A DNA stretch of 64,000 bases from Bigelowiella natans CCMP2755 (GCA_000320545.1 ADNK01000150.1:1-64000), one strand, 5' to 3'; positions 30,369 to 46,850 are shown, counted from the stretch's first letter. The notes: generated by a model not told the origin, from the sequence alone. Numbers and translations: made by a program.

Positions 30369-33300
30369 TTGGATGCTATTTTCTCTGTGCGACAAGACTT
30401 CTTCGTAGCTCTACGAGTAGACCCGACCTGCCCCATGGTCGCCGTCCTCCTCCTCCTGCTGCTTTCGGTCCTCGCGGCTTTTGTGGTGACGCGATGGATA
30501 ACAGGGAAGGGATTTGGAGCTCTAGGAGGCCAGGGCACGAAGGAAAGCTTGTCGGTGGAGAGCGTGGGCGAAAGGTGACGGCGAGACGCCAGCATTTTAT
30601 CGAGCTAATCGAATTCAGTGGCGTTCTCAATGGCACTGCGTGCTGTCATACGAAATCCCGATATATTAGTGATTGGTTCACCCTTTATCCTTCCACCCCT
30701 CTTCCTTGCAACATTGTCGTCCTTTCTTCGAAAACCACAGGAAGGAGAGATTGACTGGGTTCATCCCATTCAAGCACTGGCAAGTTCCTCAAAGCCTCGT
30801 AGTCGATTGTACTCACCCTAAAGCGGATCAGGTCCTCCTTCTTTCCTTTTCTTCCGGCAACATCAATATCTTCATAAGAACATGAGTTAAAGTCCACCAT
30901 TCAAAAGAGATTCAAAAGATACCCTCCCCCCTGATACCCTCCCCCCTCTCTCTCGACGAATAAGCTACACTCTCATCCGGAGCAATGGAAGATTTTAAAT
31001 ATCACTTCGCATTAATTTTTGACTCTTCTTTTGACTGATGCCTCTGTTGCATATTATCACATGTTGAATGCTCTCCTTTTGTTGCGCAGATTACACACCA
31101 TAAAGAGCAATCTGTCCCCGAGGAGATCAAGAGAACCATGATGTCCAGCTCCGATGGCGTCTTGACAGCCCTGAAACTTAACCACGAGCTCATTCGCAAG
31201 CATGACTGTATCAGTACCAACCACTTTGATATTGATTCTTTCGTGAGGTGGGTATTGTAAGTCACTCAATACAACAGCGGCAGTTGTTTATAGGACATAT
31301 GTGCTACTATGTGTTTCGCTAAGCTTCGTTGTTGGCACATTATCGGTGTTATCAGAAGACTGTTTGAAGCTACTATCTGTGCCCATCTCCTACGATATCA
31401 ACAACAATTTGTGCACAACACACATACAAACCGTACAAGCACACTGTTAAATATATGTATATATACATGCACACATGTAGATGCATATGTGTGTGTGTGT
31501 ATATATATATATATATGTATATGTATTCAGTGTTTGGTGTTTCCTGAACCGAGATGAGGCCCTCCGCTATGAGCGATTGCTGCGCGAAGTGGCACGGATA
31601 GGGGACTTCCGGGAGTTGCGTCTGGATGAACCTATGCAACATAAAGCTCTGAAGTAAGTTGTTATCAACGCTTGCTGTCAAAATATAATACACGTTCTCC
31701 ATCTAGACAGAAAGAGGACTGTGGATGATCTATTTCCCTCTCTTTCTTACATAGTCGCCCTTCCATACAAACACTTGCCTGTCCTTCCCTCGGGGAACCC
31801 CCCCCCTTTCCACTCCTCTTCTTTTCTGTGTCATCGTTTTCATCAGATTGTGCTGCTGGCTGAACTCAGTCGAGAAAAGGCGCTTTTATGAGCCGTTCGG
31901 CTCTGCGATGGAGAAGGACGATTCGTTGGAGAAATTCGATTACTTCTTGCCGCGGTTTAAAGCTGTTTTGGAGGTGTTGAGAGCTGATGTTAAGAGATGA
32001 AGATGACGATGACGATGATGATGATGATGATGGTGATAACTCAAACATGGACAATTATGATAATGATCATGACAATGATGACGGCTAATTCCTAATCTCC
32101 TCTCTATAGTAATCCACCTCCTTTTCCTTCTTCCTATTATACCATAGGATGTGGAGTTCGTGCGCGAGGAGTGGAGCGCAGCCTACGAGCGTGTGGTATC
32201 AGACTATGCGGTAGTAAACAATATAGATGCTGAATCCCTGCTCATCGATGGAGGTGGGAACAGCGGAGCAGGAAAAAGTGCCAATGGGGACGGCGCAAAC
32301 AGTGATATTAACGAGGATGTTGGCATCGATGACAAGGAGAAGAAGGGAGAGACCAAGCCATCTAAGGGAGATGAGAAGAAAGAGAAGGAGGAGGAGGAGG
32401 AGGAGGAGGAGAAAGGGGTTGACGAGAAGGAAAAGAAAGCTTGCACAGTGACAACTAGGCCGAAGATGAGAGGGAAGAGTGAGGAGGAGGAGGTTAAGAA
32501 GGATCATAAGGAAAAACAGAAGGGGGGGGTGGGCGACGGTGAGGCGCGTGTGACGCAGTATCCCGGCATAGATCTTGGTTTGTGAGAGATACTACACACG
32601 AACAACAAAACAATTATCATCATCCGATGATATTATTATAACAAGCACATGATTTGCATTATATTCTACTAAGGAGATACTCATGACATTTATACGTGTG
32701 GCCGAGAAGATGATGATGATGACGATGACGATGACGATGATGGCAATTAGTAGTGTGCAATTCTAATCAAGAAAATATATGTATGATATACGGACACGCA
32801 CACAGAAAATACAAGCCAACAATATGATCTGCTACCTAAAATTCTCCTTATAATTTTCGCACTGCCTTTGTTATATCTTAATTGTGTTTTACACATCTCC
32901 TTACCACCCCCCTCCTCCTTCCCCGCCTCCCTCCAGTAATGGTTTCGTGCCCTCATCCCGTTCACTACTACGCGCTCTTTAGCGTGGGGAGGGGGTTCGA
33001 CATCGTGGTCTCTCTCTACTCTCAGAATCGTTACGAGCTTGAGCAGAAATACACAACTTACGTTGATATTAATCGCCCAGTACTACCCCGACTTGCCCTG
33101 CAGGTGGATGTAGTAGTAGTAGTAGTAGTAGTAGTAGCAGTAGGCTTGTGCATGCTTGCTTGTATTTGTGTGTGTCTGATTTGTCTTCTTGTTGGTCATC
33201 GCATCGTAATCATCATCATCGTCATCGTTTTATCATCATCAGCGTGATTTTGATTGTTTGCCGCCGATGCTGTCGTCGTCTGTACGGTTGTGTGTTTACC

Positions 33301-33535
33301 CTCCCACCATCTGTCAGCCGTTAGTCCGCGTTTTGAATTCACACGAGGAGAACGCCGAAGGGTGTGTGTGGCATGCGTCCAGCTTTGCAGATTCTGGTCA
33401 TCACCATCATCGTCATCATCAACATCATCATCGTCATCATTATCATCATTATCCATCATCGTCATCAGCATCATCATTATCATAAATCCACCATCATCCT
33501 TTATTTGACACACATTTTTCATCCTCTCCCTCTCG

Positions 33536-33578
<43 letters not shown>

Positions 33579-35611
33579 CCCTCCCTCCCTCCCTCCTCCT
33601 CAGTTTCTTCCTTCCAATATTCAATATACTTCTACACACTTACAAAAACTACACACATACTCCAAGGCCCACTCCTCCGCATTGATCCTCTCTTGGATGA
33701 TGACGACGACGATGATGATGATGATGGTAACGGAGGGACTGACGAGAACGGCGACGAAGATGATGCTGGTGACAGCAAACACACATCGCCACAAAAGCAG
33801 AAACAGCAGCAGAGGCAGTTGGGGGGGGGGATGCAGAAAAGGACTGGTGCGGTGAAGAAGTTGACAAAAGCTCAGCGATATGGACACCCCAACGAACGTC
33901 CAATCTACTCATCATCGATCAATCCCTCGCTATTCCGCACCATCGTCCTCTCCTTCTTCAGATGGTAGTTAGTCATTTTTAATAGAGGGGGAGTTGGAGA
34001 GGAGAGGGAAGAGGGGGAGGGAGGTTTCATAGCAAAATATCAATTGGGTACTGTTACTACTGCTACTACTAGTAGTAGTAGTAGCCGTAATAGAAGTAGT
34101 AGTAGCTAGCGTTAGTTGTTACAATCGTGTTAGTTTAAGATGCTGATCGAGTACTACTTAAAGTAGTATTCTTCGACACTACTCAAGTTTCAACACGCTG
34201 CTGCTTTTCCTACTTTCCCACTGTAATCTTCATCATCTTCTTCTCCTTCTTCTTCTTCTTCTTCTTCTTCTTCTTCTTCGTCTGATGTTTGTGGTGATGA
34301 TGATGGTGCTGCTACAGGAGCTACAGCTGCAACCATGGCCTCCGAAAGTATAGAAGTGAGTTTATCGACGACCCTGTGGCCAAATGCGATGCTGCAGCTA
34401 ACACTAAGATGAATGCTGCTTCTACCGACGTGAAGGCGGCCGATAAGGGCAAAGAAATCGATGAGCAGCAGCAGCAGCAGCAGCAGCACCGGGTATTGTC
34501 AGAGTCAGTATCTTCAACGCGACGACGAAGTAGAAGCATAAGTAGAAGAAGTAGTAGTAGAGGCCCCCTTCCGATAGAAGCAGCAGCATCATCAGCAGCA
34601 TCAGTACCAGGGCGCAATAATAATTCTCATCATCATCATCATCATCATCACCGTCGTCGTCGTCGTCGTATTTCCCCCTCCCCCTCCTCCTCCTCACCAT
34701 CCGCAAGACTGAGAAGCGCTGCTGGCAACGTGGTGGGAACCATTACTACAACTACGACACCTTCCCCTGGCCCCTCCCTTCGCAGCCCACGCTCCGCCTC
34801 CTCTTCCTTCTTCTCCACACCCAAAACCAACAACGACAACAGCAATAACCCCTCCCCCTTTACCCCTTCAATGGGAGGAGGAAGGCGTGGTAGAGGGGGG
34901 GCACGTTTATCCCGAGATATGTCATCGGGATCACTTCTCGGAGACCGATTTCACTTGCTCTCTTCCTCCTCCTCCTCTCTCCGCCTAGAGCTCGACACTG
35001 CAAGCAGCTCCGCAACGAACACGGCTACCTCTACTCCCACGGGAGGGGGGGGGATGAGGAGAGGTTTCTTCTTCCCTGCAGCAGAAGCAGCAGCAGCAGG
35101 AGGAGGAGGAGAGGGTGAAGAATCTTCATCATCTTCAGATGGAGAAGACAGCTACGATGATGAGCTCGAAGCGTTGCACGAGGAAGCAGATCGATTTCGG
35201 ATAAAGAGGACAAGGCGGAGGAGGAGGAGGGGGAGGGGGAGAAGCAGCAAGAGTAGGAGTAGTACGCCAGGCAATGGTGCCTCCTCCATCACGCCGACGC
35301 GTGATAATCGCAGCTTTTCCGAACTCTCCTTCGGTTCCGCCTCCTCCAACATCACCGACACCTCTTCCATCATTATTGGGGAATATGACGACGATGACGA
35401 CGACGACGATGATGATGGCGATGGTAGGTTTGACGATGAGGACGGTAGTAGCAGTGGTAGCAACGGTAGCAGCAGCAGTCCTGGCTTGTGGTCAGTGCTG
35501 CAGAAGGGACGATATAACGTTATGCAGAAACGAGAAAGATGGAGATGGAAGCAGATACGATAGTGAGGACGTTGCTAGTAGTAGTAGTAGTAGCTGTTGT
35601 TGTAGTTGTTA

Positions 35612-35643
<32 letters not shown>

Positions 35644-36434
35644 TTGTAACAATCCCTCCTAGACAATATATGCATGGGAAACAAGAAGAAGATGAGGCGA
35701 AGAACAATACACAATAGCGCCACAACGACCAGAATTCACTTACAACCTAGCATCTTTCGAAACGTGCCCCCCACACTCATACTTTTCTTCCCACCGCTTT
35801 TTCTTCTTCTTCTTCTTCCTCTTCTGATCAAAAATCCCTAATCATCACCGTGGTGCTCTTCATCATCATCACCACCACCACCACCACCACCATCATCATC
35901 ATGTCACCGATCGATGCTGCCAACCATCAGTTTCAACAAGTGCCTGGATTGGGAGACGTGGGAGCGAGGCCTTGCGCACATGGACAACGCGATCTGGGAT
36001 GCAGTCAATATGGCACTCCCAAGCCCTTCGTCATCCAACGACAAAGAAGGGGCAGAGCAACAAAATGCGATCGACACCGCCAATAAAAGCGGGGGGGGTG
36101 ACCACAACGTTTTAGCGCTGCTCTCCGAACTTGATAATGACGAGGAAGATGGGAAAGCTGCTGCCGGTAGTATACCTCCTCCTCCCCCCTTCTTCCCCCC
36201 CCCCCCTCTCGGCGATGGTGGAGTCCCTCCACCCCCCCCTGGTGTACTACCTCCCCCGCCAATGTTACTTGCTGGTGGCGGTTGTGGCATGGAAGGCAAG
36301 ACGATGATCAGGCAAAATCCTAATGGTGAACCCTCGGTCGGCTGAGCACTCACACACACACGCACACGCACACGCACACGCACACTACACCACAGTGTAC
36401 ATACAATGTGAATATATGTATAAATGTATATATT

Positions 36435-36494
<60 letters not shown>

Positions 36495-37530
36495 TTATTC
36501 ATCGTCGTCGGCTGAACTTCGATCTCACTTTAGACCGAACTGAAGCGGTTGCACTGGATACCGGTGAGGAGCGACACCAAAGGAGGATTGCCTGAGAGCT
36601 GCATATGGGCAGATATGGAAGAAGATCTTCAGCTGGACGTTTCGGAGATATCAAGACGATTCTCCTCGAAATTGCCTCGAAAGAAGAAGAAGAAGAAGAA
36701 TAAGAAAAAGGGTTAGTTTTTCCGTCATCATCATCTGGGCACTAGGATTATACTGAATGAATCAAAGTCCACAATAAATTGCTTCTGTAATCTCCTTCCC
36801 CCTCTCACACACACAATACACACGACAGGTAGCGGTGGGATGAACAAGTTTGGTGGTGGGGCGGGGAATGTAGCGCTGCTGGATCCAAAGAGAGAGATGA
36901 ACATATCCATAGCCCTCTCTGGGATGAGAATGGTGCCTGACTACTACTACTACTACTACAACTACTACTACTACTACGACAGAATAGATTATGAGGAAGG
37001 AAGGAGGCGAGAGAGGGGGGGAGAGGAGGGGCTGCAGGCGTGCACTTGAGAGAGAGAGAGAGGGAGAGAGAGAGAGAGAGTTTGACGTAATTACTCATAT
37101 ATTGGGTATCATATGTTTTGTTGGTAGATGGTGGAGGATATAAGCGAGGCAATTCTCAATGTAGATCTCTCGATATTGACGATAGAGCGCCTCCCACAGC
37201 TGCAGCTGCTCCTTCCTTCGGAGGAGGAGGCTAAGATTGTGGCAAGGTAGTGCTGTAAAAGCAAGCGACGGGAAACAAAATATTTATATTTATTAATGTA
37301 TTAATTTTGATTTGTTTGACCGTTGATATGAGCGGCAAATACAATGTAATACGATTTCTGTTACTGTTACTACTTCTACCACCACCACCACCACTGCTGC
37401 TGCTACTACTACTACTTCCACTACTGCTACTGCGACTTCTTACTGGCAGCAATATGATATCAATATCTTCTTCAACTCAACCTTAATTCGCTGAAACCTC
37501 CAATTATTACTTGTATACACACACACACGC

Positions 37531-37572
<42 letters not shown>

Positions 37573-37887
37573 TGTCCGACAAACACGCAGGCACGAGTAC
37601 TATGCGTCTGAGCTGTTATGAAACCGTCATCATCGATAACAACGAATACTTCCTCCCTCCCTCCCCCATAGATATAGCGGAGAACCGAGCAGTCTCACCC
37701 TTGCCTCACGGCTTCACTACCTTGTCCTCCTCCCCCCTCAAGACGGGAGGAAGCAGCAGGCACTGACAAGAAAGGGGAGGGGCGTCAAATACCTTGCTAC
37801 AGTGGAGGCGCTGCGGAAGGAGATCATCTCTCGCATTAACCACGTCGCATTCATCCACAATCTACCTGAAAAGTATTATGATGGCGG

Positions 37888-37931
<44 letters not shown>

Positions 37932-38657
37932 AGAGGAGGAGGAGGAAGAAGAAGAAGAAGAAGAAGATATTATAGGAGGATACGCCGTCTATATAGTAGT
38001 ATAATAATCGCAAAGAAGTATAGTGCTTTAGAAATGTGTTTCCTCTTCCACAAATGTGCTCTCATCATCATCTGATCTGTTACCCAAGATCAAGAAATCT
38101 GTTACCCAAGATCAAGAAACATATGCAATGTGTGCGTCCGTCTCTTGCTACTTGGAGAAAGACTTTTCTGTTTTTCCATCAGCAGCCACCCACCCCACCC
38201 TTCCCCTCTGCTTGTGATCGCAGCACGTTGTTCATAGCATATATGTAAACACGGGATAATAGGCTCCGAAAAGTCCATCGAGATTTGACTCACTTCAATG
38301 GAGCGATTTCTACGCTGAGAGACTCCCAGAGAATCAGGGATATAGTGCGGGTATTACATCGTAATAGGCCCCGGGGGGGGGGGGGGGGGGGGTAGCAGTA
38401 GTAGTGGTGGTTGTAGTAGTCGTCGTGGTGATAATAGTAGTAATAATAAGCGTTATCAGTTAATTTTGTGGTCTTTCTGATCTCCCCTCTTTGGTGTCGT
38501 CTGTGCTTTTAGTCATTAAATAGTTCTTATCATTACAGCATTGTCAATATATCCTCTGTGACTACTACTCTTTCAGACGACGTTGACACTCGGAAACTTC
38601 ATGAATTACAGCCTCAACGCACGAGGAAAGGGTTACACTGCGGGGTATATTATAATT

Positions 38658-38696
<39 letters not shown>

Positions 38697-38842
38697 ACGG
38701 TTCTTTTTTGCATTTGTTTTAATACTTGCTTCTGTCTTTTCAATATATTTTCAATAACTGCTGTATTATATACATCATGGATAAACAACTTTGGCACATG
38801 TTTTGAATCCATCACACACAAATAATAGCTGCTTGACATACA

Positions 38843-38880
<38 letters not shown>

Positions 38881-39115
38881 GAGGCGTCATGTGCTCGCTC
38901 TCTGCAGAAATTGCACGTGATGTTCGTGAATAGGATATATTAAATGGATACTCCTTACCCCTCCGCCCCCGCCCCCTCCCTCTTGATTCTGCTATCTTCG
39001 CTTTTCTCTCAGATTTGGCGTGGAGATTCTGACGAAACTCCACCTGTCAAAAGTAGTAGCAGATAGAAGTCTTCGGCTTGAGAGATATAAAGACATGACA
39101 ACTTCTTTGCACCGA

Positions 39116-39160
<45 letters not shown>

Positions 39161-39635
39161 CGATGATCTTCATCCAAAACACTCATCGATGCAATCGCTT
39201 CTGTGCGCCATTTGTGTTGTACCTAGCACAATTTCCTTTGATGTTATTTCGTCGCTGTTCTCCTCATCCTCCTCCTGATAAATGATCACGATGGTCAACA
39301 ATTCTGAAGGCTGCCGCTGGCACTACTAACTGACTTAAATAACAATAAGGCTACAGACCGGAAATCTTCCCTTCTGGATTTCGTCGCTTCAGTTTGCTTA
39401 AAAAGATTTCCCTCCACGTGCAGCGTACAGGAACAGCTTGCAGTAGAGCTCAGGCACGTCATCAAAGCTGCGAAGGTGCTGTCAGCATGCTTTGAAGTCT
39501 AATGAAATGCATACTCCATATATTCTTTTTGCTTTAGATATTTTTACAATAAGATAGTATATACGATAATATATATGTCGTTCTTCTCGGTCTTCGCGTT
39601 GACAATAAGCTGGTGCGTAGCTATATCTCTTGTGT

Positions 39636-39682
<47 letters not shown>

Positions 39683-41145
39683 GTTGGTCTCCTGATGGCT
39701 ATAAAGGAGGACATTGTTCATCCTCTTTAATCGTCCTTCCATTTCTCATTGCCACGGATTCTGCTGTGTTTTATTAGAACTAGCACTAGCATCAGCAGCA
39801 TGTTGTCACCATCAGCGTCGTCGCCTCCTCAACGGCCGATTAATCGCTCTCGCTATTGCTTTTTGTGTGGCACTCATTCTTTTGCGGCGTGTAGATTGAC
39901 AGCGAGCAAGCTTTCGGAGAGCTGGCAGGGGTGAAGCGGGAGTTGAAGGTGATGGGAGAGAACCTAAGACAGATCGCTGTAGCGGCAAAAAGGGCTCGAT
40001 TGACAGGGCAACGAAGCCTCAACTTCAACGATGGTGCAATCACCGGAAAGGGCGACGACAATGACCAGAATGACGTTTCTAGCAGTGGCATCATTCTGCA
40101 TGGTGTGATGGCGGCTCGCTTTTATAAGGCACTGTCTAAACGGTTAGCGATGTGCTATGATCTGTCCTCCCCCCCCTCGTTTTCCCAACGACGACAGCAG
40201 AGTCAATGTCAGCAGCGAGGGTTATATGAGTTTCGTAGAATGATCGAAAGTATTGGTAGCCATATTGGGGATGTTAAACGGCAAGCAACATATAACGGGG
40301 AGATATCTGTTAGTAAAGTATTTTGGGCTATAATGACGACCCTTCCGTCACCCCTCCTCCTCCTCCTCCTCCTCCTCCTCCTCCTTCTCTTGGCAATATC
40401 ATTCATAGGTTTATGAAGTGCGCAAGGGTTCACGATTCCCTGCAGAAAAACGTGCGACTGACTAACTCGCAATTCCAGGCTCTGCTCAAGTTTTGGTCGG
40501 TCTCTGTTTTCTCCGTGTACTCCGTCCATGCAGATGTTTGGGGTTGAGAAGGGGGGGAGGAAAGTAACAACAACAATAACAACAACAACGACGACGACGA
40601 TGGCGACGAGGACGATTTAACGACAGTCGCAACAACCGTGTAATAAGAGTACGATGATGACAGCAAAGAAACAGGCAGAGCGTTCACGGAGCGATGATGA
40701 ATCTTTCTCCCTTGACTGACTGCTGTTGTTGTATGTACTTAAAAATTCAAAGGGGAGAAGGAATTCCGGGTGGTGGAGCACACTTTAAGAAAATGGAGGG
40801 ATTCTTCGAGGTGTATACGTGTGTGTGTGTGTGACACACACACACACACACACACAAATACAAAATATAGAAGTTGAGGTGGGGGGGATGGAGAGGGGAT
40901 AAGGAAAGAAAAGTTCGGCGAATCTTATGTTGATATAATCTTTTTCATCACGAAAGATATTCGCGGAATTCGCTCCGATCTGGGACGATGTAGTCGCCCG
41001 AACCCGCCAGAGAGCTGCTCAGCAGCAGCAGCAAGAAGGAGAACGGATCAAATCGTTACTATCACCTTCCAAAAAGACCAACTATGCTAACAACAGCGAA
41101 AGCGACCGTGGTGCACTCCGGAGGCGCACTGTTAGTGCGATGTAG
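30369..41145 (+). CDS. Membrane-anchored DUF6687-like domain fused to FH1-FH2 formin (single spliced gene model)
   Basis: TM segment VAVLLLLLLSVLAAFVV. DUF6687-like motifs LVVDCTH, ITHHK, STNHFDIDSFVS, EVARIGDFREL and HYYALFS. GT-AG junctions 33964/34318, 35562/35931 and 36336/36534 are in frame and lead into a polyproline FH1 and the FH2. One FH2 junction (about 36710/36829) was not fully resolved. Confidence 0.7.
36172..41145 (+). other. Formin FH1 (polyproline) and FH2 domain portion
   Basis: IPPPPPFFPPPP..VPPPPPGVLPPPP, then ELKRLHWIP..CIW, LLDPKREMNISIAL, LLPSEEE, YSGEPSSL, LTLGNFMN, FGVEILTKLHLSKATDRKSSLLDFV and ELRHVIKAAK. Confidence 0.9.
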
Positions 41146-41149
41146 ATGA

Positions 41150-42200
41150 AGGGAACAATGACTAGCTAGCTAGATGCATGCACGCAGACTAGCAAGGGAC
41201 GCCGAAACTGTCAATCTCTAGCTCTTGCTAGCTAGATCTAGCAACACTAGACTGATAGATTAGTATGTACATGATCAAAATAATCCACGTTCTGGCAATG
41301 TTTACACGACAACTTATCTAGTTGTGCTCGATATTTCTAGATGTCTACGCTAGCTAGCTAGCTACGGTGCAAATGTGTGCACCCGGTACACCTAGCTAGC
41401 TAGCTAGTTAGCAGACACGCTAGCGCGGCAGCAGTCTCGATCCGCTTCGCTAGCTTCGTCACGCAACACTGCATGCTAGCATGTCTAGATGTGCGTGAAC
41501 AACGCTAGAATGAATGCTAGCCATCTAGAATGGGCAACTCTTGAACGCACATGCAGCTGTGATCATGCCAGCTAGCCTACATCTAGAGATTTTCAAGCGT
41601 CCATGCTGGTATGCCCAGATGTGCCTCTAGCTAGCTAGCAAGGTTGCCTCAGCGCATTAGCTGGTTCTAGAGTTAGGCATGCTAGCATGCAGATCGAGCA
41701 TCTAGCTGGCTAGTCATCTAGCCATCTCTAGATCTCTAGTTCTACACAGACACTACTTGGAGATCGTCCACAGTCGCATAGCTAGCATAGACATAGAGAT
41801 CTCTAGATGACTAGAGAGCATTTAGCTAGTTAGACGTGTGTGCACAGCTATAGACGGACTAGCTAGTCTAGGGAGGTGTCACCACATCTAAATCGACACG
41901 ATAGATGTCCAGATTTCTAGATGTGCATGATCACATGCTTCATTAAGTCGCTATAGTCAGTTCTCATCGTTCTGAGGCCATATCATGTTTAGATTTGGCA
42001 CATACATACACACGCTCAACATTTGTCTCACAACACTAATAAGTGAGTCTGAAAGTGCACTGTAGATCAATGCTAGATTCAGAGCACGTCTAGATCCTAG
42101 CTAGAGATTTTCACACTTGTCTGGCAGATTAGAGAGGCGTTTCATCCTTGGCGATGTAGCCATACAAGACACGGAGATTAAATTAAGTAGTTGCTAAAAT
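41150..42200. repeat. CTAG-rich decayed intergenic repeat tract
   Basis: About 20 CTAG counted by eye in 41161-41460, plus many CATG/TGCA. No long ORF. Confidence 0.7.
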
Positions 42201-45199: not shown

Positions 45200-46850
45200 G
45201 AAGTGGCACTAAGAGAACAAAATTGTCACGTTACATGTAGTCGACAAACATCGAACATCGAACTTCTCCGCATTGCATTGTTACAAACAAGTGCAGCAAG
45301 AAGGTGTATGTGCGTGTGCAGCAAATTGACAACAACGCCATTCAGGTGGCTGTTGAGTTCTTGTGTCAAAGAAATCAGCATGTCGCAGAACAATGAACAA
45401 TGATGAGCAATGAACAATGAACAAAGCATTGATGCAAGTCTGCGTGCGCCAAAACCACGTGTGAAACAGGCGTGTGCATGCAGCAGTGCCTCAGCAAAAA
45501 TCATTGCGAGGACTAAATCAGCAGAAGTGAATGGCACGCTGACAGACCATGGTGAGGAATCAAAGAAAAGCACATGGATTCACAATTTGTTGTTTCAACA
45601 ATTCCAATGACGTGCCACGCCAGCACGCGATGCCGTCCAGCCGTCCAGCTGTGTTGTTTGCCAAACGATTTGGGGTCCAACAAATCCCCCTGGCACTTGA
45701 GGTTCCAGTCCAACTTGTTGGCAGTACTTGTGCATCGCACGTCTTGTCAGAACGTTTTGTGCTTTGCTGGTTTGACCTGGCTAGCTCTGGAGCTGGTGAC
45801 GTGTCAGCGCCAGAGCGTGCCTGGTGCATCCAATGACACGTTTGCAAAACGCACACCCTGCTCGTGCTGGCCTGACTGGCTAGCTGGTCTGAGCCCAGAC
45901 TTGATTTGGGACGGAGCTTTTCAGCAAGTCAACACGTGTCAAAAATGGACACAAATCTTGAACCTCAGGGGGTGCGATTGTTGTTCCAAAGTGATTGTGC
46001 ACAGACCAGCATGGGGCCGGCCCGAGGGGGCACAAGCTGGCTTGCTGGTGGCTGGACAAGGCCAGAAGGAGGCTAGCTAGCTAGGAGGGCGAGCCGTGTG
46101 AGATTGAGAGCACGAAAGTGTCGTTTTCACTCCAACTCCAAAAAGCATTGCGAGCCACGAAGGAGCTCGCATGGAGGGAAGCTAGTCACAACGTGTGCCA
46201 CTTTTGACTTTGAGAAGAACAGGTCTGTCAGCGACCAACAACAAAGTGACAGGACACGCTTGCATGCCTTTGCTCAGGTTCTCTTTTTCCGTGCACGTCA
46301 GGCCAGCAGAGGCCTCGACTCTTCTCGCCCTCAGCTAGCTCAGCTGTCTGGTTGTGAAGCGCATCGTGGGCAGTGCAAACGCTGCGATGATGAACACGCA
46401 CGCTGCACCGTTCACCTGTTCCAGTGTTGTTCGTCTGTCATGGCATTCCATGTCTAGATGTGACAGAGTGTCGGCCATGTGTGCACACTGATGTCTGGAA
46501 ATCACATTCACGTGCACTGGCTCAAATTCTCAAATTGCTAGTGCTTAGAATTGTCACACGTTGCGCTGCATCAGAAACACAAAATGAAAAACTGCGCGTG
46601 GCCTAAACGTGCGCATGCATGTCTGGATGCATGCCTGCATTGTCATCAATTGGAGATGGCTTGATCGACGTGCTAGCGTGGCGCGGCACATCATGATGAC
46701 GTGTGCAATGTTGTGCGTGATTTGCAAAAACACTCCAAATTTCAACTCAATTGAGTAGGTGAGGATGTGCTGAACAAACTGTTTGAAACGTTGCAAAATG
46801 AAATGCGGTCTCAGCCTCATTCAAGATGGCATGCTGCAAACTTGATGTCA
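45200..46850. repeat. CpG-decayed (TGCA/CATG/CACG-rich) intergenic relic, probably a dead mobile element
   Basis: High TG/CA/CTAG content. ORFs are Cys/His-rich with no recognisable motif. Element family not identifiable. Confidence 0.4.

What the first reader, a model, noticed from the sequence alone, without database searches (positions are those of the whole stretch)
30369..41145. Membrane-anchored DUF6687-like (putative DHH-type metallo-hydrolase) domain fused to a formin
Seen: the apparent stop codons at 33966 and 35561 both overlap GT donors (TG|GTAG, TA|GTGAGG). These splice in frame to acceptors at 34318 and 35931, giving FFRW-SYSC... and WRWKQIR-Y-FNKCLDWETWE, which runs into a polyproline FH1 and then (36336/36534, phase 0) into the FH2. 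The FH2 keeps the Ile (NISI) and Lys (SK) that align with the actin-binding residues of other formins. The N-terminal domain keeps acidic/His motifs (VVD, THH, NHFDIDS, GDF) that look like a permuted DHH phosphoesterase metal site (inference). Known formin accessory domains include GBD/FH3, PTEN-like, RhoGAP and TM. I do not know this architecture. It suggests an actin nucleator tethered to a membrane and coupled to a nucleotide or lipid hydrolase.
Basis: partly seen in the sequence, partly recalled or inferred. Interest (0 to 1): 0.85.

Follow-up and report, generated by a model that had tools for sequence, protein, structure and literature searches.

The report
Membrane-anchored DHH-like domain fused to formin
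One 23-exon gene of the alga Bigelowiella natans, split into two models in the public annotation, joins a membrane anchor and a phosphoesterase-like domain of unknown function (DUF6687) to an actin-nucleating formin, and two other chlorarachniophytes have the same fusion.

Summary
The window is Bigelowiella natans.

Splicing 23 exons (30435-41145, + strand) gives one open frame of 1,589 aa. In order it has an N-terminal hydrophobic anchor, DUF6687 (Pfam E 1e-52 and better), FH1 with four polyproline tracks, and FH2 (E 4e-51).

JGI's two ab initio models, 67251 and 67252, cut the DUF6687 domain in two and miss two of its exons.

The decisive evidence is two orthologues that carry DUF6687 and FH2 in one protein. 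One is a Chlorarachnion reptans transcriptome peptide; the other is an Amorphochlora amoebiformis genome model. Both read without a break through sequence conserved on either side of the two disputed junctions.

The 415-aa low-complexity exon is an insertion inside DUF6687. The family's C-terminal motif (RKR-W-x-W-x-E-I) comes after it and spans junction 35562/35931.

AlphaFold models of DUF6687 (pLDDT 90.5) match only DHH/DHHA1 phosphoesterases at the top of an exhaustive PDB comparison (Z up to 8.8). No DHH or GGGH sequence motif is present, so it is a relative by fold only.

No B. natans transcript was available. Enzyme activity, substrate and membrane topology are inferred.

I found no paper on DUF6687 or on this architecture.

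The parts
30435..30574 (+). Exon 1: start codon, hydrophobic N-terminal segment MVAVLLLLLLSVLAAFVVT (putative signal anchor) and a short linker
   Evidence: First ATG of the stop-free stretch. Same as JGI 67251. Kyte-Doolittle mean 2.96 over residues 1-19, the only strongly hydrophobic 19-mer in the protein.
30741..30831 (+). Exon 2: start of DUF6687 (FIPF...VVDCTHP)
   Evidence: Family HMM hit at 30754-30831. Pfam profile match starts at position 4. GT-AG borders.
31090..31247 (+). Exon 3: DUF6687, THH and NHFDIDSF motifs
   Evidence: HMM hit i-E 9e-17. Invariant H/D columns.
31531..31653 (+). Exon 4: DUF6687, IGDFRELRL motif
   Evidence: HMM hit i-E 1.4e-17. G-D-F-R is invariant.
31847..31973 (+). 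Exon 5: DUF6687 (KLCCWLN...FLPRF)
   Evidence: HMM hit i-E 1.9e-19.
32148..32577 (+). Exon 6: end of the DHH-like half, then a Glu/Lys/Gly-rich insertion of about 110 aa. The donor is G|GTTTGT, and TGA 32583-32585 inside the intron is where JGI model 67251 stops.
   Evidence: The orthologues and the bacterial protein continue with IDLVMVSCP / IGLVVVRTP, which is encoded in exon 7.
32937..33103 (+). Exon 7: start of the DHHA1-like half (HYYALF...KYTTYVD...LPR). It is in neither JGI model.
   Evidence: Pfam DUF6687 E 1.4e-16, profile positions 205-261. Aligns with P0023, P0024 and P0004.
33318..33396 (+). Exon 8: PLVRVLNSHEENAEGCVWHASSFADSG. It is in neither JGI model.
   Evidence: Matches PLVRVLNSYEN..WHAPSFKDSG of the C. 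reptans cDNA peptide and the A. amoebiformis model. GT-AG borders.
33667..33964 (+). Exon 9: PLLRIDP, an acidic insertion, then KKLTKAQRYGHPNERPIYSSSI...FFRW. TAG 33966-33968 overlaps the donor.
   Evidence: Pfam profile positions 293-329. JGI 67252 starts inside this exon at 33831.
34318..35562 (+). Exon 10: SYSCNHGLR, a Ser/Arg/Gly/Asp-rich disordered insertion of about 375 aa, then LWSVLQKGRYNVMQKRERWRWKQIR, which is the C-terminal element of DUF6687. TAG 35561-35563 overlaps the donor.
   Evidence: Both flanks are conserved in P0023 and P0024. The tail motif matches the bacterial P[RK]K-x-W[TS]W-x-E[IVM]. In the AlphaFold model of the C. reptans protein the insertion has pLDDT 31-45 and the tail about 80. 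JGI removes 34504-34707 as an intron; it is in frame and its status is undecided.
35931..36336 (+). Exon 11: end of the DUF6687 tail (YFNKCLDWETWERGLA), a linker, and FH1 with four polyproline tracks
   Evidence: JGI's 57-nt intron (36167-36223) removes a proline track that the C. reptans cDNA keeps, so it is probably not an intron.
36534..40142 (+). Exons 12-20: FH2 domain. Exons are 36534-36711, 36829-36932, 37128-37246, 37672-37872, 38263-38350, 38577-38644, 39013-39052, 39350-39475 and 39895-40142.
   Evidence: Exact exon map of JGI 67252. Pfam FH2 E 4.4e-51. Aligns with mDia1, FMNL3, DAAM1, INF2 and Bni1 FH2 structures, with the conserved Ile and Lys retained.
40409..41145 (+). Exons 21-23 (40409-40495, 40753-40810, 40957-41145): C-terminal end of FH2, a basic tail, and stop TAG 41143-41145
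   Evidence: Collinear with the orthologues (RFMKCAK...FEKMEDFF.IF..F).

Best explanation
Positions 30435-41145 (+ strand) are one Bigelowiella natans gene of 23 exons. It encodes a protein of about 1,589 aa, or 1,502 aa if two doubtful in-frame introns are removed. The protein has these parts in order:
- An N-terminal hydrophobic signal anchor.
- A complete DUF6687 domain: a two-lobed fold of DHH/DHHA1 phosphoesterase type that keeps every invariant His/Asp/Glu of its family. It is interrupted by three lineage-specific low-complexity insertions. The largest, about 375 aa, lies just before the domain's last structural element.
- A short FH1 with four polyproline tracks.
- An FH2 domain with the actin-binding Ile and Lys.

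Likely mechanism (inferred):
- The anchor inserts with its C-terminal side in the cytosol, because the positive charges follow the hydrophobic segment.
- The FH2 dimer therefore nucleates and elongates actin filaments at the surface of that membrane, and FH1 feeds it profilin-actin.
- This is the working principle of plant class I (transmembrane) formins.
- The DUF6687 domain takes the place that GBD/FH3 or PTEN-like domains hold in other formins. It probably binds a divalent metal and a phosphoester ligand. It could turn that ligand over as an enzyme, or use the site for regulation or localisation.

What is shown: the gene structure, the domain content, conservation of the fusion in three chlorarachniophyte genera, and the fold class.

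What is inferred: topology, catalysis, substrate, and any coupling between the two activities.
For: Gene structure:
- 22 GT-AG introns leave one 4,770-nt open frame.
- Pfam DUF6687 matches are spread over exons 2-9, covering profile positions 4-193, 205-261 and 293-332.
- JGI models 67251 and 67252 are both ab initio (fgenesh1_pg) and adjacent. Each holds part of the same domain.

Fusion:
- P0024 (C. reptans MMETSP0109 transcript peptide, 966 aa) has DUF6687 at E 5e-84 and FH2 at E 3e-60.
- P0023 (A. amoebiformis, 1,145 aa) has DUF6687 at E 1.5e-90 and FH2 at E 8e-45.
- The A. amoebiformis annotation was trained on RNA-seq with Trinity and PASA (PMC12730881).
- Sequence is conserved across both junctions: FFRW|SYSCNHGLR against FFRW-CYSTNHGLR and YFRW-GYSTNHGLR; WRWKQIR|Y|FNKCLDWETWERGLA against WTWKEIQQFNRKVCWTEWEEGLA.
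- The RKR-W-x-W-x-E-I element equals the bacterial C-terminal tail. It is predicted to be ordered after a disordered insertion.

Fold:
- The AlphaFold model of a bacterial member has pLDDT 90.5 and pTM 0.90.
- Foldseek's best hit is PAP phosphatase 8a8k (E 7e-4), and the list is almost purely DHH proteins.
- In the exhaustive VIA search the top 23 of 48,161 chains are all DHH/DHHA1, with Z 8.8, 8.4 and 7.3 at the top.
- The eukaryotic domain gives the same list.

FH2: aligns with mDia1 with Ile and Lys conserved.

Anchor.
Against: - No B. natans transcript or peptide spanning the junctions was found. There were no hits of 230-733 aa to the low-complexity exon. The FH2 tail hit only the JGI model among the library representatives. 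The junction 28-mers are absent from JGI metagenome contigs.
- Both orthologue sequences start inside the domain at profile position 47. The anchor and the VVD/THH strands are therefore seen fused to a formin only in B. natans.
- A C-terminal-tail HMM built from six bacterial sequences did not pick out exon 10 above noise.
- Fold Z-scores are middling (at most 8.8), with high rmsd over the two lobes together.
- There is no DHH or GGGH sequence motif, no Pfam DHH/DHHA1 hit, no PDB hit by sequence profile, and hhalign against E. coli RecJ gives probability below 1%. Catalysis is therefore unproven.
- Some members of the DHH fold (Cdc45, the AlaRS C-Ala domain) are not enzymes.
Confidence: 0.85

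Rival explanations
1. There are two independent genes. A DUF6687 gene ends at TAG 33966, and a formin gene starts downstream, for example at the Met of MNAAS near 34409. The fused reading would then come from chance in-frame GT-AG pairs.
For: The public annotation has two models. No B. natans transcript evidence was found.
Against: The two JGI models do not divide at the TAG. Model 67252 itself starts inside the last DUF6687 exon and uses junction 33964/34318. Two orthologues, one cDNA-derived, are continuous and conserved on both sides of both junctions. The family's C-terminal motif lies after the low-complexity exon.
Confidence: 0.03
2. The fusion is real, but DUF6687 is not an enzyme here. 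It would act as a scaffold, dimerisation or membrane/ligand-recognition module. Cdc45 is a non-catalytic DHH-fold protein, and the PTEN-like domain of plant class II formins is a phosphatase-like domain used for localisation.
For: Canonical DHH and GGGH motifs are absent. Cdc45 and AlaRS C-Ala chains are among the structural matches. No substrate clue comes from bacterial neighbourhoods, which differ between taxa.
Against: Every invariant polar residue of the family (D in VVD, HH, H-x-D-x-D, GDFRE) is kept in B. natans, and the orthologues keep those within their range. That pattern is typical of a conserved metal/active site shared with free-standing bacterial members.
Confidence: 0.3
3. The N-terminal hydrophobic stretch is a cleaved signal peptide, possibly the first half of a chlorarachniophyte bipartite plastid presequence. 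The protein would then be lumenal, secreted or plastid-targeted rather than cytosol-facing.
For: The hydrophobic run starts at residue 2, as in signal peptides.
Against: FH1/FH2 needs cytosolic actin and profilin (established formin biology). In other eukaryotic DUF6687 proteins the hydrophobic segment lies 20-50 residues from the N-terminus, as in an anchor. Positive charges (R20, K25) follow the segment. No predictor for signal peptides or topology was available.
Confidence: 0.07

Closest known systems
Plant class I formins (e.g. Arabidopsis AtFH1), transmembrane formins
   Same: FH1-FH2 is tethered to a membrane by a hydrophobic segment N-terminal to it. Actin nucleation is therefore expected at a membrane surface. 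There is no GBD/DID/DAD autoinhibition module.
   Different: Class I formins have a cleaved signal peptide, a Pro-rich extracellular domain and an internal transmembrane helix. Here the hydrophobic segment is at the extreme N-terminus, and a roughly 900-aa DUF6687 domain with insertions lies between it and FH1. No relationship of descent is implied.
Plant and moss class II formins with an N-terminal PTEN-like domain
   Same: A phosphatase-like fold takes the N-terminal accessory position of a formin, where it can provide membrane or ligand targeting.
   Different: The fold is different (PTEN/C2 against DHH/DHHA1-like). Here the conserved polar residues of the accessory domain are all retained, and a membrane anchor is added.
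DHH/DHHA1 phosphoesterases (NrnA, PggH, GdpP, archaeal PAP phosphatase, RecJ, yeast PPX1, family II pyrophosphatase)
   Same: Two-lobed architecture. The C-terminal lobe superposes on DHHA1 at about 3 Å over roughly 100 residues (Z 5-7). The N-terminal lobe has an H-x-D-x-D element after a strand at the place of DHH motif I.
   Different: No DHH (motif III) or GGGH motif. No sequence-profile similarity. Extra N-terminal strands carry conserved D and HH. The N-lobe is much more helical than a DHH domain.
Free-standing DUF6687 proteins (PF20392) of Bacteroidota such as Hymenobacter, and of various protists
   Same: Same domain from end to end, 39-42% identity in the core, and all invariant residues shared. 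The protist versions also have an N-terminal hydrophobic segment. Relatives were found in 236 genome stretches of the bacterial/archaeal species collection.
   Different: They are about 340-360 aa with no insertions and no FH1/FH2. The bacterial ones lack the anchor.
mDia1 / FMN2-type FH2 domains
   Same: These are the best solved-structure matches by sequence (mDia1 E 1.5e-21). The knob Ile and post Lys are conserved, as is the GNFMN motif.
   Different: Only 22-27% identity outside chlorarachniophytes. There is a lineage-specific insertion of about 20 aa in the FH2 core, shared with the two orthologues. No GBD/DID/DAD.

Membership tests
Formin (FH2 family, PF02181) | FH2 domain scoring above the Pfam gathering threshold | tested here: met
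   174.6 bits against a cutoff of 34.8, E 4.4e-51, residues 505-845 of P0021. The orthologues score 205 and 154 bits.
Formin (FH2 family, PF02181) | Conserved actin-binding Ile (knob) and Lys (post) | tested here: met
   NISIAL aligns with NLSIFL and HLSKATD with RDTKSAD of mDia1 in the HMMER alignment. That these columns correspond to Bni1 I1431/K1601 comes from my own knowledge.
Formin (FH2 family, PF02181) | Proline-rich FH1 directly N-terminal to FH2 | tested here: met
   Four tracks of PPPP or PPPPP at residues 1035-1063, about 25 aa before FH2.
Formin (FH2 family, PF02181) | Actin nucleation and processive capping activity | not testable with these tools
   Needs pyrene-actin or TIRF assays.
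DUF6687 (PF20392) | Profile match above the gathering threshold over the whole domain | tested here: met
   Profile positions 4-193 (195.5 bits), 205-261 (61 bits) and 293-332 (30-33 bits), cutoff 27. The orthologues cover 47-333 in one stretch.
DUF6687 (PF20392) | Invariant residues of the family retained | tested here: met
   VVD, HH, NHFDIDSF and GDFRE are all present in B. natans.
DHH/DHHA1 phosphoesterase superfamily | Two-domain DHH plus DHHA1 fold | tested here: met
   The top 23 of 48,161 PDB representatives are all DHH/DHHA1 proteins, Z 8.8 to 4.6. Foldseek E 7e-4. The eukaryotic domain gives the same result. The Z values are middling, so this shows fold class, not proven homology.
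DHH/DHHA1 phosphoesterase superfamily | Sequence motifs I-IV, including the DHH triad, in canonical order | tested here: not met
   No DHH tripeptide in any member. No Pfam DHH hit at E up to 10. Only an H-x-D-x-D element at the motif I position is inferred from alignment ranges.
DHH/DHHA1 phosphoesterase superfamily | GGGH substrate-binding motif in the DHHA1 lobe | tested here: not met
   No GGGH-like string in eight members or in the B. natans protein.
DHH/DHHA1 phosphoesterase superfamily | Metal-dependent phosphoesterase activity | not testable with these tools
   Needs a biochemical assay. Model coordinates could not be inspected, so the metal-site geometry was not checked.
Plant class I (transmembrane) formins | Signal peptide, extracellular Pro-rich domain and internal transmembrane helix before FH1-FH2 | tested here: not met
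   The only hydrophobic segment is residues 1-19, and there is no ectodomain. The resemblance is in how it works, not in membership.

The most novel reading that the evidence does not exclude
Chlorarachniophytes have their own class of formin. In it, a membrane-anchored, catalytically active enzyme of DHH-like fold (DUF6687) is hard-wired to FH1-FH2. Turnover of a phosphoester signal at one membrane, such as a nucleotide second messenger, pAp or polyphosphate, would then directly gate local actin assembly. That would be a coupling of a nucleotide or phosphate-hydrolysing enzyme to an actin nucleator not described for any formin. It would also give DUF6687 its first function.
Probability: 0.2. 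Interest if true: 0.8.

Novelty: new variant of a known kind. Interest (0 to 1): 0.55.

Why it matters
- It corrects the B. natans annotation. Two adjacent ab initio models and two unannotated exons are one gene.
- It defines a formin architecture (anchor, DUF6687, FH1, FH2) conserved in at least three chlorarachniophyte genera. Formin accessory domains decide where and when actin is made, so a new one points to a new mode of control in amoeboflagellate algae whose cytoskeleton is almost unstudied.
- It gives a domain of unknown function, present in 236 stretches of the bacterial/archaeal genome collection and in many protists, a fold assignment (DHH/DHHA1-like) and a testable catalytic-site hypothesis: H-x-D-x-D, GDFRE, VVD and HH.
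- It shows a roughly 375-aa disordered insertion tolerated inside a globular domain just before its last structural element. Domain-boundary predictors will miss this.

Tried and rejected
- A tail HMM built from six bacterial C-termini and run against all six-frame segments of the window did not rank exon 10 above noise. The link became clear only with the chlorarachniophyte orthologues.
- A search with the low-complexity exon (419 aa) found no protein of 230-733 aa.
- The single representative-library search, using the FH2 tail, returned only JGI 67252. No B. natans transcriptome peptide was visible.
- Exact look-ups of P0001, P0023 and P0004 found no contig. The A. amoebiformis locus could therefore not be checked for upstream anchor exons.
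- Spliced-junction 28-mers were absent from JGI metagenome contigs.
- A PDB sequence-profile search with the family alignment gave no hit at E up to 10.
- A Pfam scan of all members at E up to 10 gave only DUF6687.
- hhalign of the family against E. coli RecJ gave probability below 1%.
- Bacterial gene neighbourhoods differ: Peptidase_S28 directly downstream in one Bacteroidota MAG, a convergent SbcC in Hymenobacter. I saw no conserved operon and got no substrate clue.
- Literature: no paper mentions DUF6687. None links Bigelowiella with FH2 or formins in a relevant way.
- Rejected: the JGI introns 34504-34707 and 36167-36223 as certain. Both are in frame and stop-free, and the second deletes a proline track kept in the C. 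reptans cDNA.

Full report
**What the window is.** The best hit to my hand-spliced DUF6687 core was 'jgi/Bigna1/67251' at 93% identity. The window is therefore nuclear DNA of the chlorarachniophyte Bigelowiella natans. It is intron-rich and full of microsatellites.

**Checking the observation.** I read the sequence and listed all stop-free stretches on the + strand.
- The TAGs at 33966 and 35561 overlap the donors.
- Pfam confirms DUF6687 (PF20392). The spliced core scores E 1e-52 on profile positions 4-193. An exon at 32937-33103 scores 1.4e-16 on positions 205-261. The exon ending at 33964 covers positions 293-329.
- Pfam confirms FH2 at E 4.4e-51.
- The FH2 aligns with mDia1, FMNL3, DAAM1, INF2 and Bni1 structures.

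**The public annotation.** Two adjacent ab initio models exist.
- 67251 (P0001, 358 aa) runs from the ATG at 30435 to TGA 32583. That TGA lies just after a donor (G|GTTTGT at 32577/32578), so the model loses the last third of DUF6687.
- 67252 (P0021, 1,009 aa) was found with the FH2 tail as query. It starts at an internal Met at 33831, inside the last DUF6687 exon.
- Both are 'fgenesh1_pg' predictions and carry no transcript support.
- Each model holds a piece of one domain. Two domain exons, 32937-33103 and 33318-33396, are in neither.

**The full model.** I joined exons 1-9 to the exons of 67252, without its two doubtful in-frame introns. This gives 23 exons, 22 GT-AG introns and one open frame of 1,589 aa. 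With those two introns removed it is 1,502 aa.

**Is the fusion real?** A search with the FH2 half of P0021 returned two proteins that Pfam marks with both PF20392 and PF02181.
- P0023 is Amorphochlora amoebiformis AAMO2058_000088400 (1,145 aa).
- P0024 is an MMETSP0109 Chlorarachnion transcriptome peptide (966 aa).
- A fresh Pfam scan gives DUF6687 at E 1.5e-90 and 5.4e-84, and FH2 at 8e-45 and 2.6e-60.
- The A. amoebiformis annotation was trained on RNA-seq with Trinity and PASA (PMC12730881).

In the four-way alignment the B. natans model is collinear with both orthologues from residue 94, where they start, to the end. Sequence is conserved on both sides of each disputed junction.
- First junction: FFRW|SYSCNHGLR (B. 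natans), FFRW-CYSTNHGLR (A. amoebiformis) and YFRW-GYSTNHGLR (C. reptans).
- Second junction: LWSVLQKGRYNVMQKRERWRWKQIR|Y|FNKCLDWETWERGLA (B. natans), LWSALQHGEYKIIDRKRNWTWKEIQQFNRKVCWTEWEEGLA (C. reptans) and LWRFLQMGEFVATERKREWTWGELRRINKYVDTASWEQGFS (A. amoebiformis).

A cDNA from another genus that reads straight through both positions makes the two-gene reading very unlikely.

**The low-complexity exon is inside the domain.** Bacterial DUF6687 proteins end with ...FF-x-x-RYA-x-I-x-P[RK]K-x-W[TS]W-x-E[IVM]. In the chlorarachniophytes the RKR-x-W-x-W-x-E-I element comes after the insertion, which is about 375 aa in B. natans, about 230 in A. amoebiformis and about 100 in C. reptans.

In an AlphaFold model of C. 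reptans residues 1-485, the insertion has pLDDT 31-45. The tail (residues 451-480) returns to about 80, with a bridge and a helix as in the bacterial model.

The DUF6687 domain therefore ends only in exon 11, across junction 35562/35931. This ties the low-complexity exon to both neighbours. My earlier test with a tail HMM from six bacterial sequences had not detected this.

**What DUF6687 is.** No paper mentions it. Sequence methods see nothing beyond the family itself.

An AlphaFold model of the Hymenobacter protein, built with a 22-sequence alignment, is confident (pLDDT 90.5, pTM 0.90).
- Foldseek against the PDB returns almost only DHH/DHHA1 proteins. The best is archaeal PAP phosphatase 8a8k at E 7e-4.
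- VIA-align on those candidates gives Z 8.8 (PF0399 DHH domain) and 8.5 (PggH), then NrN, RecJ, Cdc45, NrnA and GdpP.
- An exhaustive VIA search that does not depend on Foldseek puts DHH/DHHA1 proteins in all of the top 23 places among 48,161 chains.
- The C-terminal lobe superposes on DHHA1 at about 3 Å over about 100 residues.
- The C. reptans domain gives the same list.

The Z values are middling, and the tool warns that such values can reflect a common arrangement. The purity of the lists is what persuades me of the fold class.

At the sequence level the canonical DHH and GGGH motifs are absent. I therefore file it as DHH-like by fold, not as a member of the family by its motifs.

**On 'permuted'.** The C. 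reptans model lacks the first 46 profile positions. Its residue 20-21 aligns with residue 5-10 of PggH, NrN and PAP phosphatase. This places the strand plus NHFDIDSF where DHH motif I (DxD) sits. With the full-length bacterial model, residue 1 aligns with residue 28-45 of the enzymes.

This fits the conserved VVD and HH strands being an N-terminal addition or a permutation. I could not see residue-level alignments or coordinates, so it stays an inference.

All invariant polar residues are kept in B. natans: D of VVD, HH, H-x-D-x-D and GDFRE. This favours a working metal or ligand site.

**The anchor.** Residues 1-19 (MVAVLLLLLLSVLAAFVVT) are the only strongly hydrophobic 19-mer in the protein. 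R20 and K25 follow, which by the positive-inside rule would leave the rest in the cytosol, where a formin must be.

Other eukaryotic DUF6687 proteins have a hydrophobic segment 20-50 residues from the N-terminus, whereas the bacterial ones have none. The orthologue sequences start too late to show theirs. I had no signal-peptide or topology predictor.

**How it most likely works.** It is a membrane-tethered formin. The anchor fixes it to a membrane, the FH2 dimer nucleates and elongates filaments there, and FH1 recruits profilin-actin.

The DHH-like domain takes the accessory position. It either hydrolyses a phosphoester, or binds one for regulation or targeting. Because free-standing protist DUF6687 proteins are already anchored, the simplest history is that a formin was fused to a pre-existing membrane enzyme, which brought actin assembly to that enzyme's membrane.

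Which membrane, which substrate, and whether the two halves talk to each other are all open. B. natans may also produce intron-retention isoforms that stop at 33966; I could not test that.

**Comparison and novelty.** It works like plant class I formins (membrane tether) and resembles class II formins (a phosphatase-like accessory domain), but belongs to neither. The databases already show both Pfam domains on the two orthologues and on JGI 67252. However, I found no publication on DUF6687 or on this architecture.

I rate it a new variant of a known kind. Interest is moderate. Formins are known for lineage-specific accessory domains. The conserved enzyme-like partner, the fold assignment for a widespread DUF and the annotation correction are the useful results.

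Noticed in passing
window 41150-41950: About 800 bp directly 3' of the formin stop codon is packed with CTAG-based palindromes (CTAGCTAGCTAG, TCTAGA, GCTAGC). CTAGCTAGCTAG occurs 5 times here and once at 46073, against 0.01 expected from shuffles.
   Followed up: partly
window 32937-33103 and 33318-33396: Two coding exons of the DUF6687 domain are absent from both JGI Bigna1 models (67251, 67252). Model 67251 stops at an intronic TGA (32583).
   Followed up: yes
window 34504-34707 and 36167-36223: JGI 67252 removes these as introns. Both are multiples of 3 and stop-free. The 57-nt one deletes a polyproline track that the C. reptans cDNA keeps, so it is probably exonic. The 204-nt one is undecided.
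   Followed up: partly
L001:8001-10299; L004:3950-8510: Bacterial DUF6687 genes show no conserved neighbourhood. A Peptidase_S28/S37 gene starts 2 nt downstream in a Bacteroidota MAG. In Hymenobacter mucosus there is a convergent SbcC-like ATPase and a small upstream ORF with a sub-threshold HNH_5 match (19.6 bits, cutoff 27.5).
   Followed up: partly
window 37672-37872 (FH2 exon 15): The FH2 core has an insertion of about 20 aa relative to mDia1 (PPQDGRKQQALTRKGRGVKY). The two chlorarachniophyte orthologues share its position but not its sequence.
   Followed up: no
window 32260-32560 and 33690-33830: Besides the large insertion in exon 10, there are two more lineage-specific low-complexity insertions inside DUF6687. 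One is Glu/Lys/Gly-rich and lies between the two lobes. The other is poly-Asp and lies in the DHHA1-like lobe. Both are much shorter or absent in the orthologues.
   Followed up: partly
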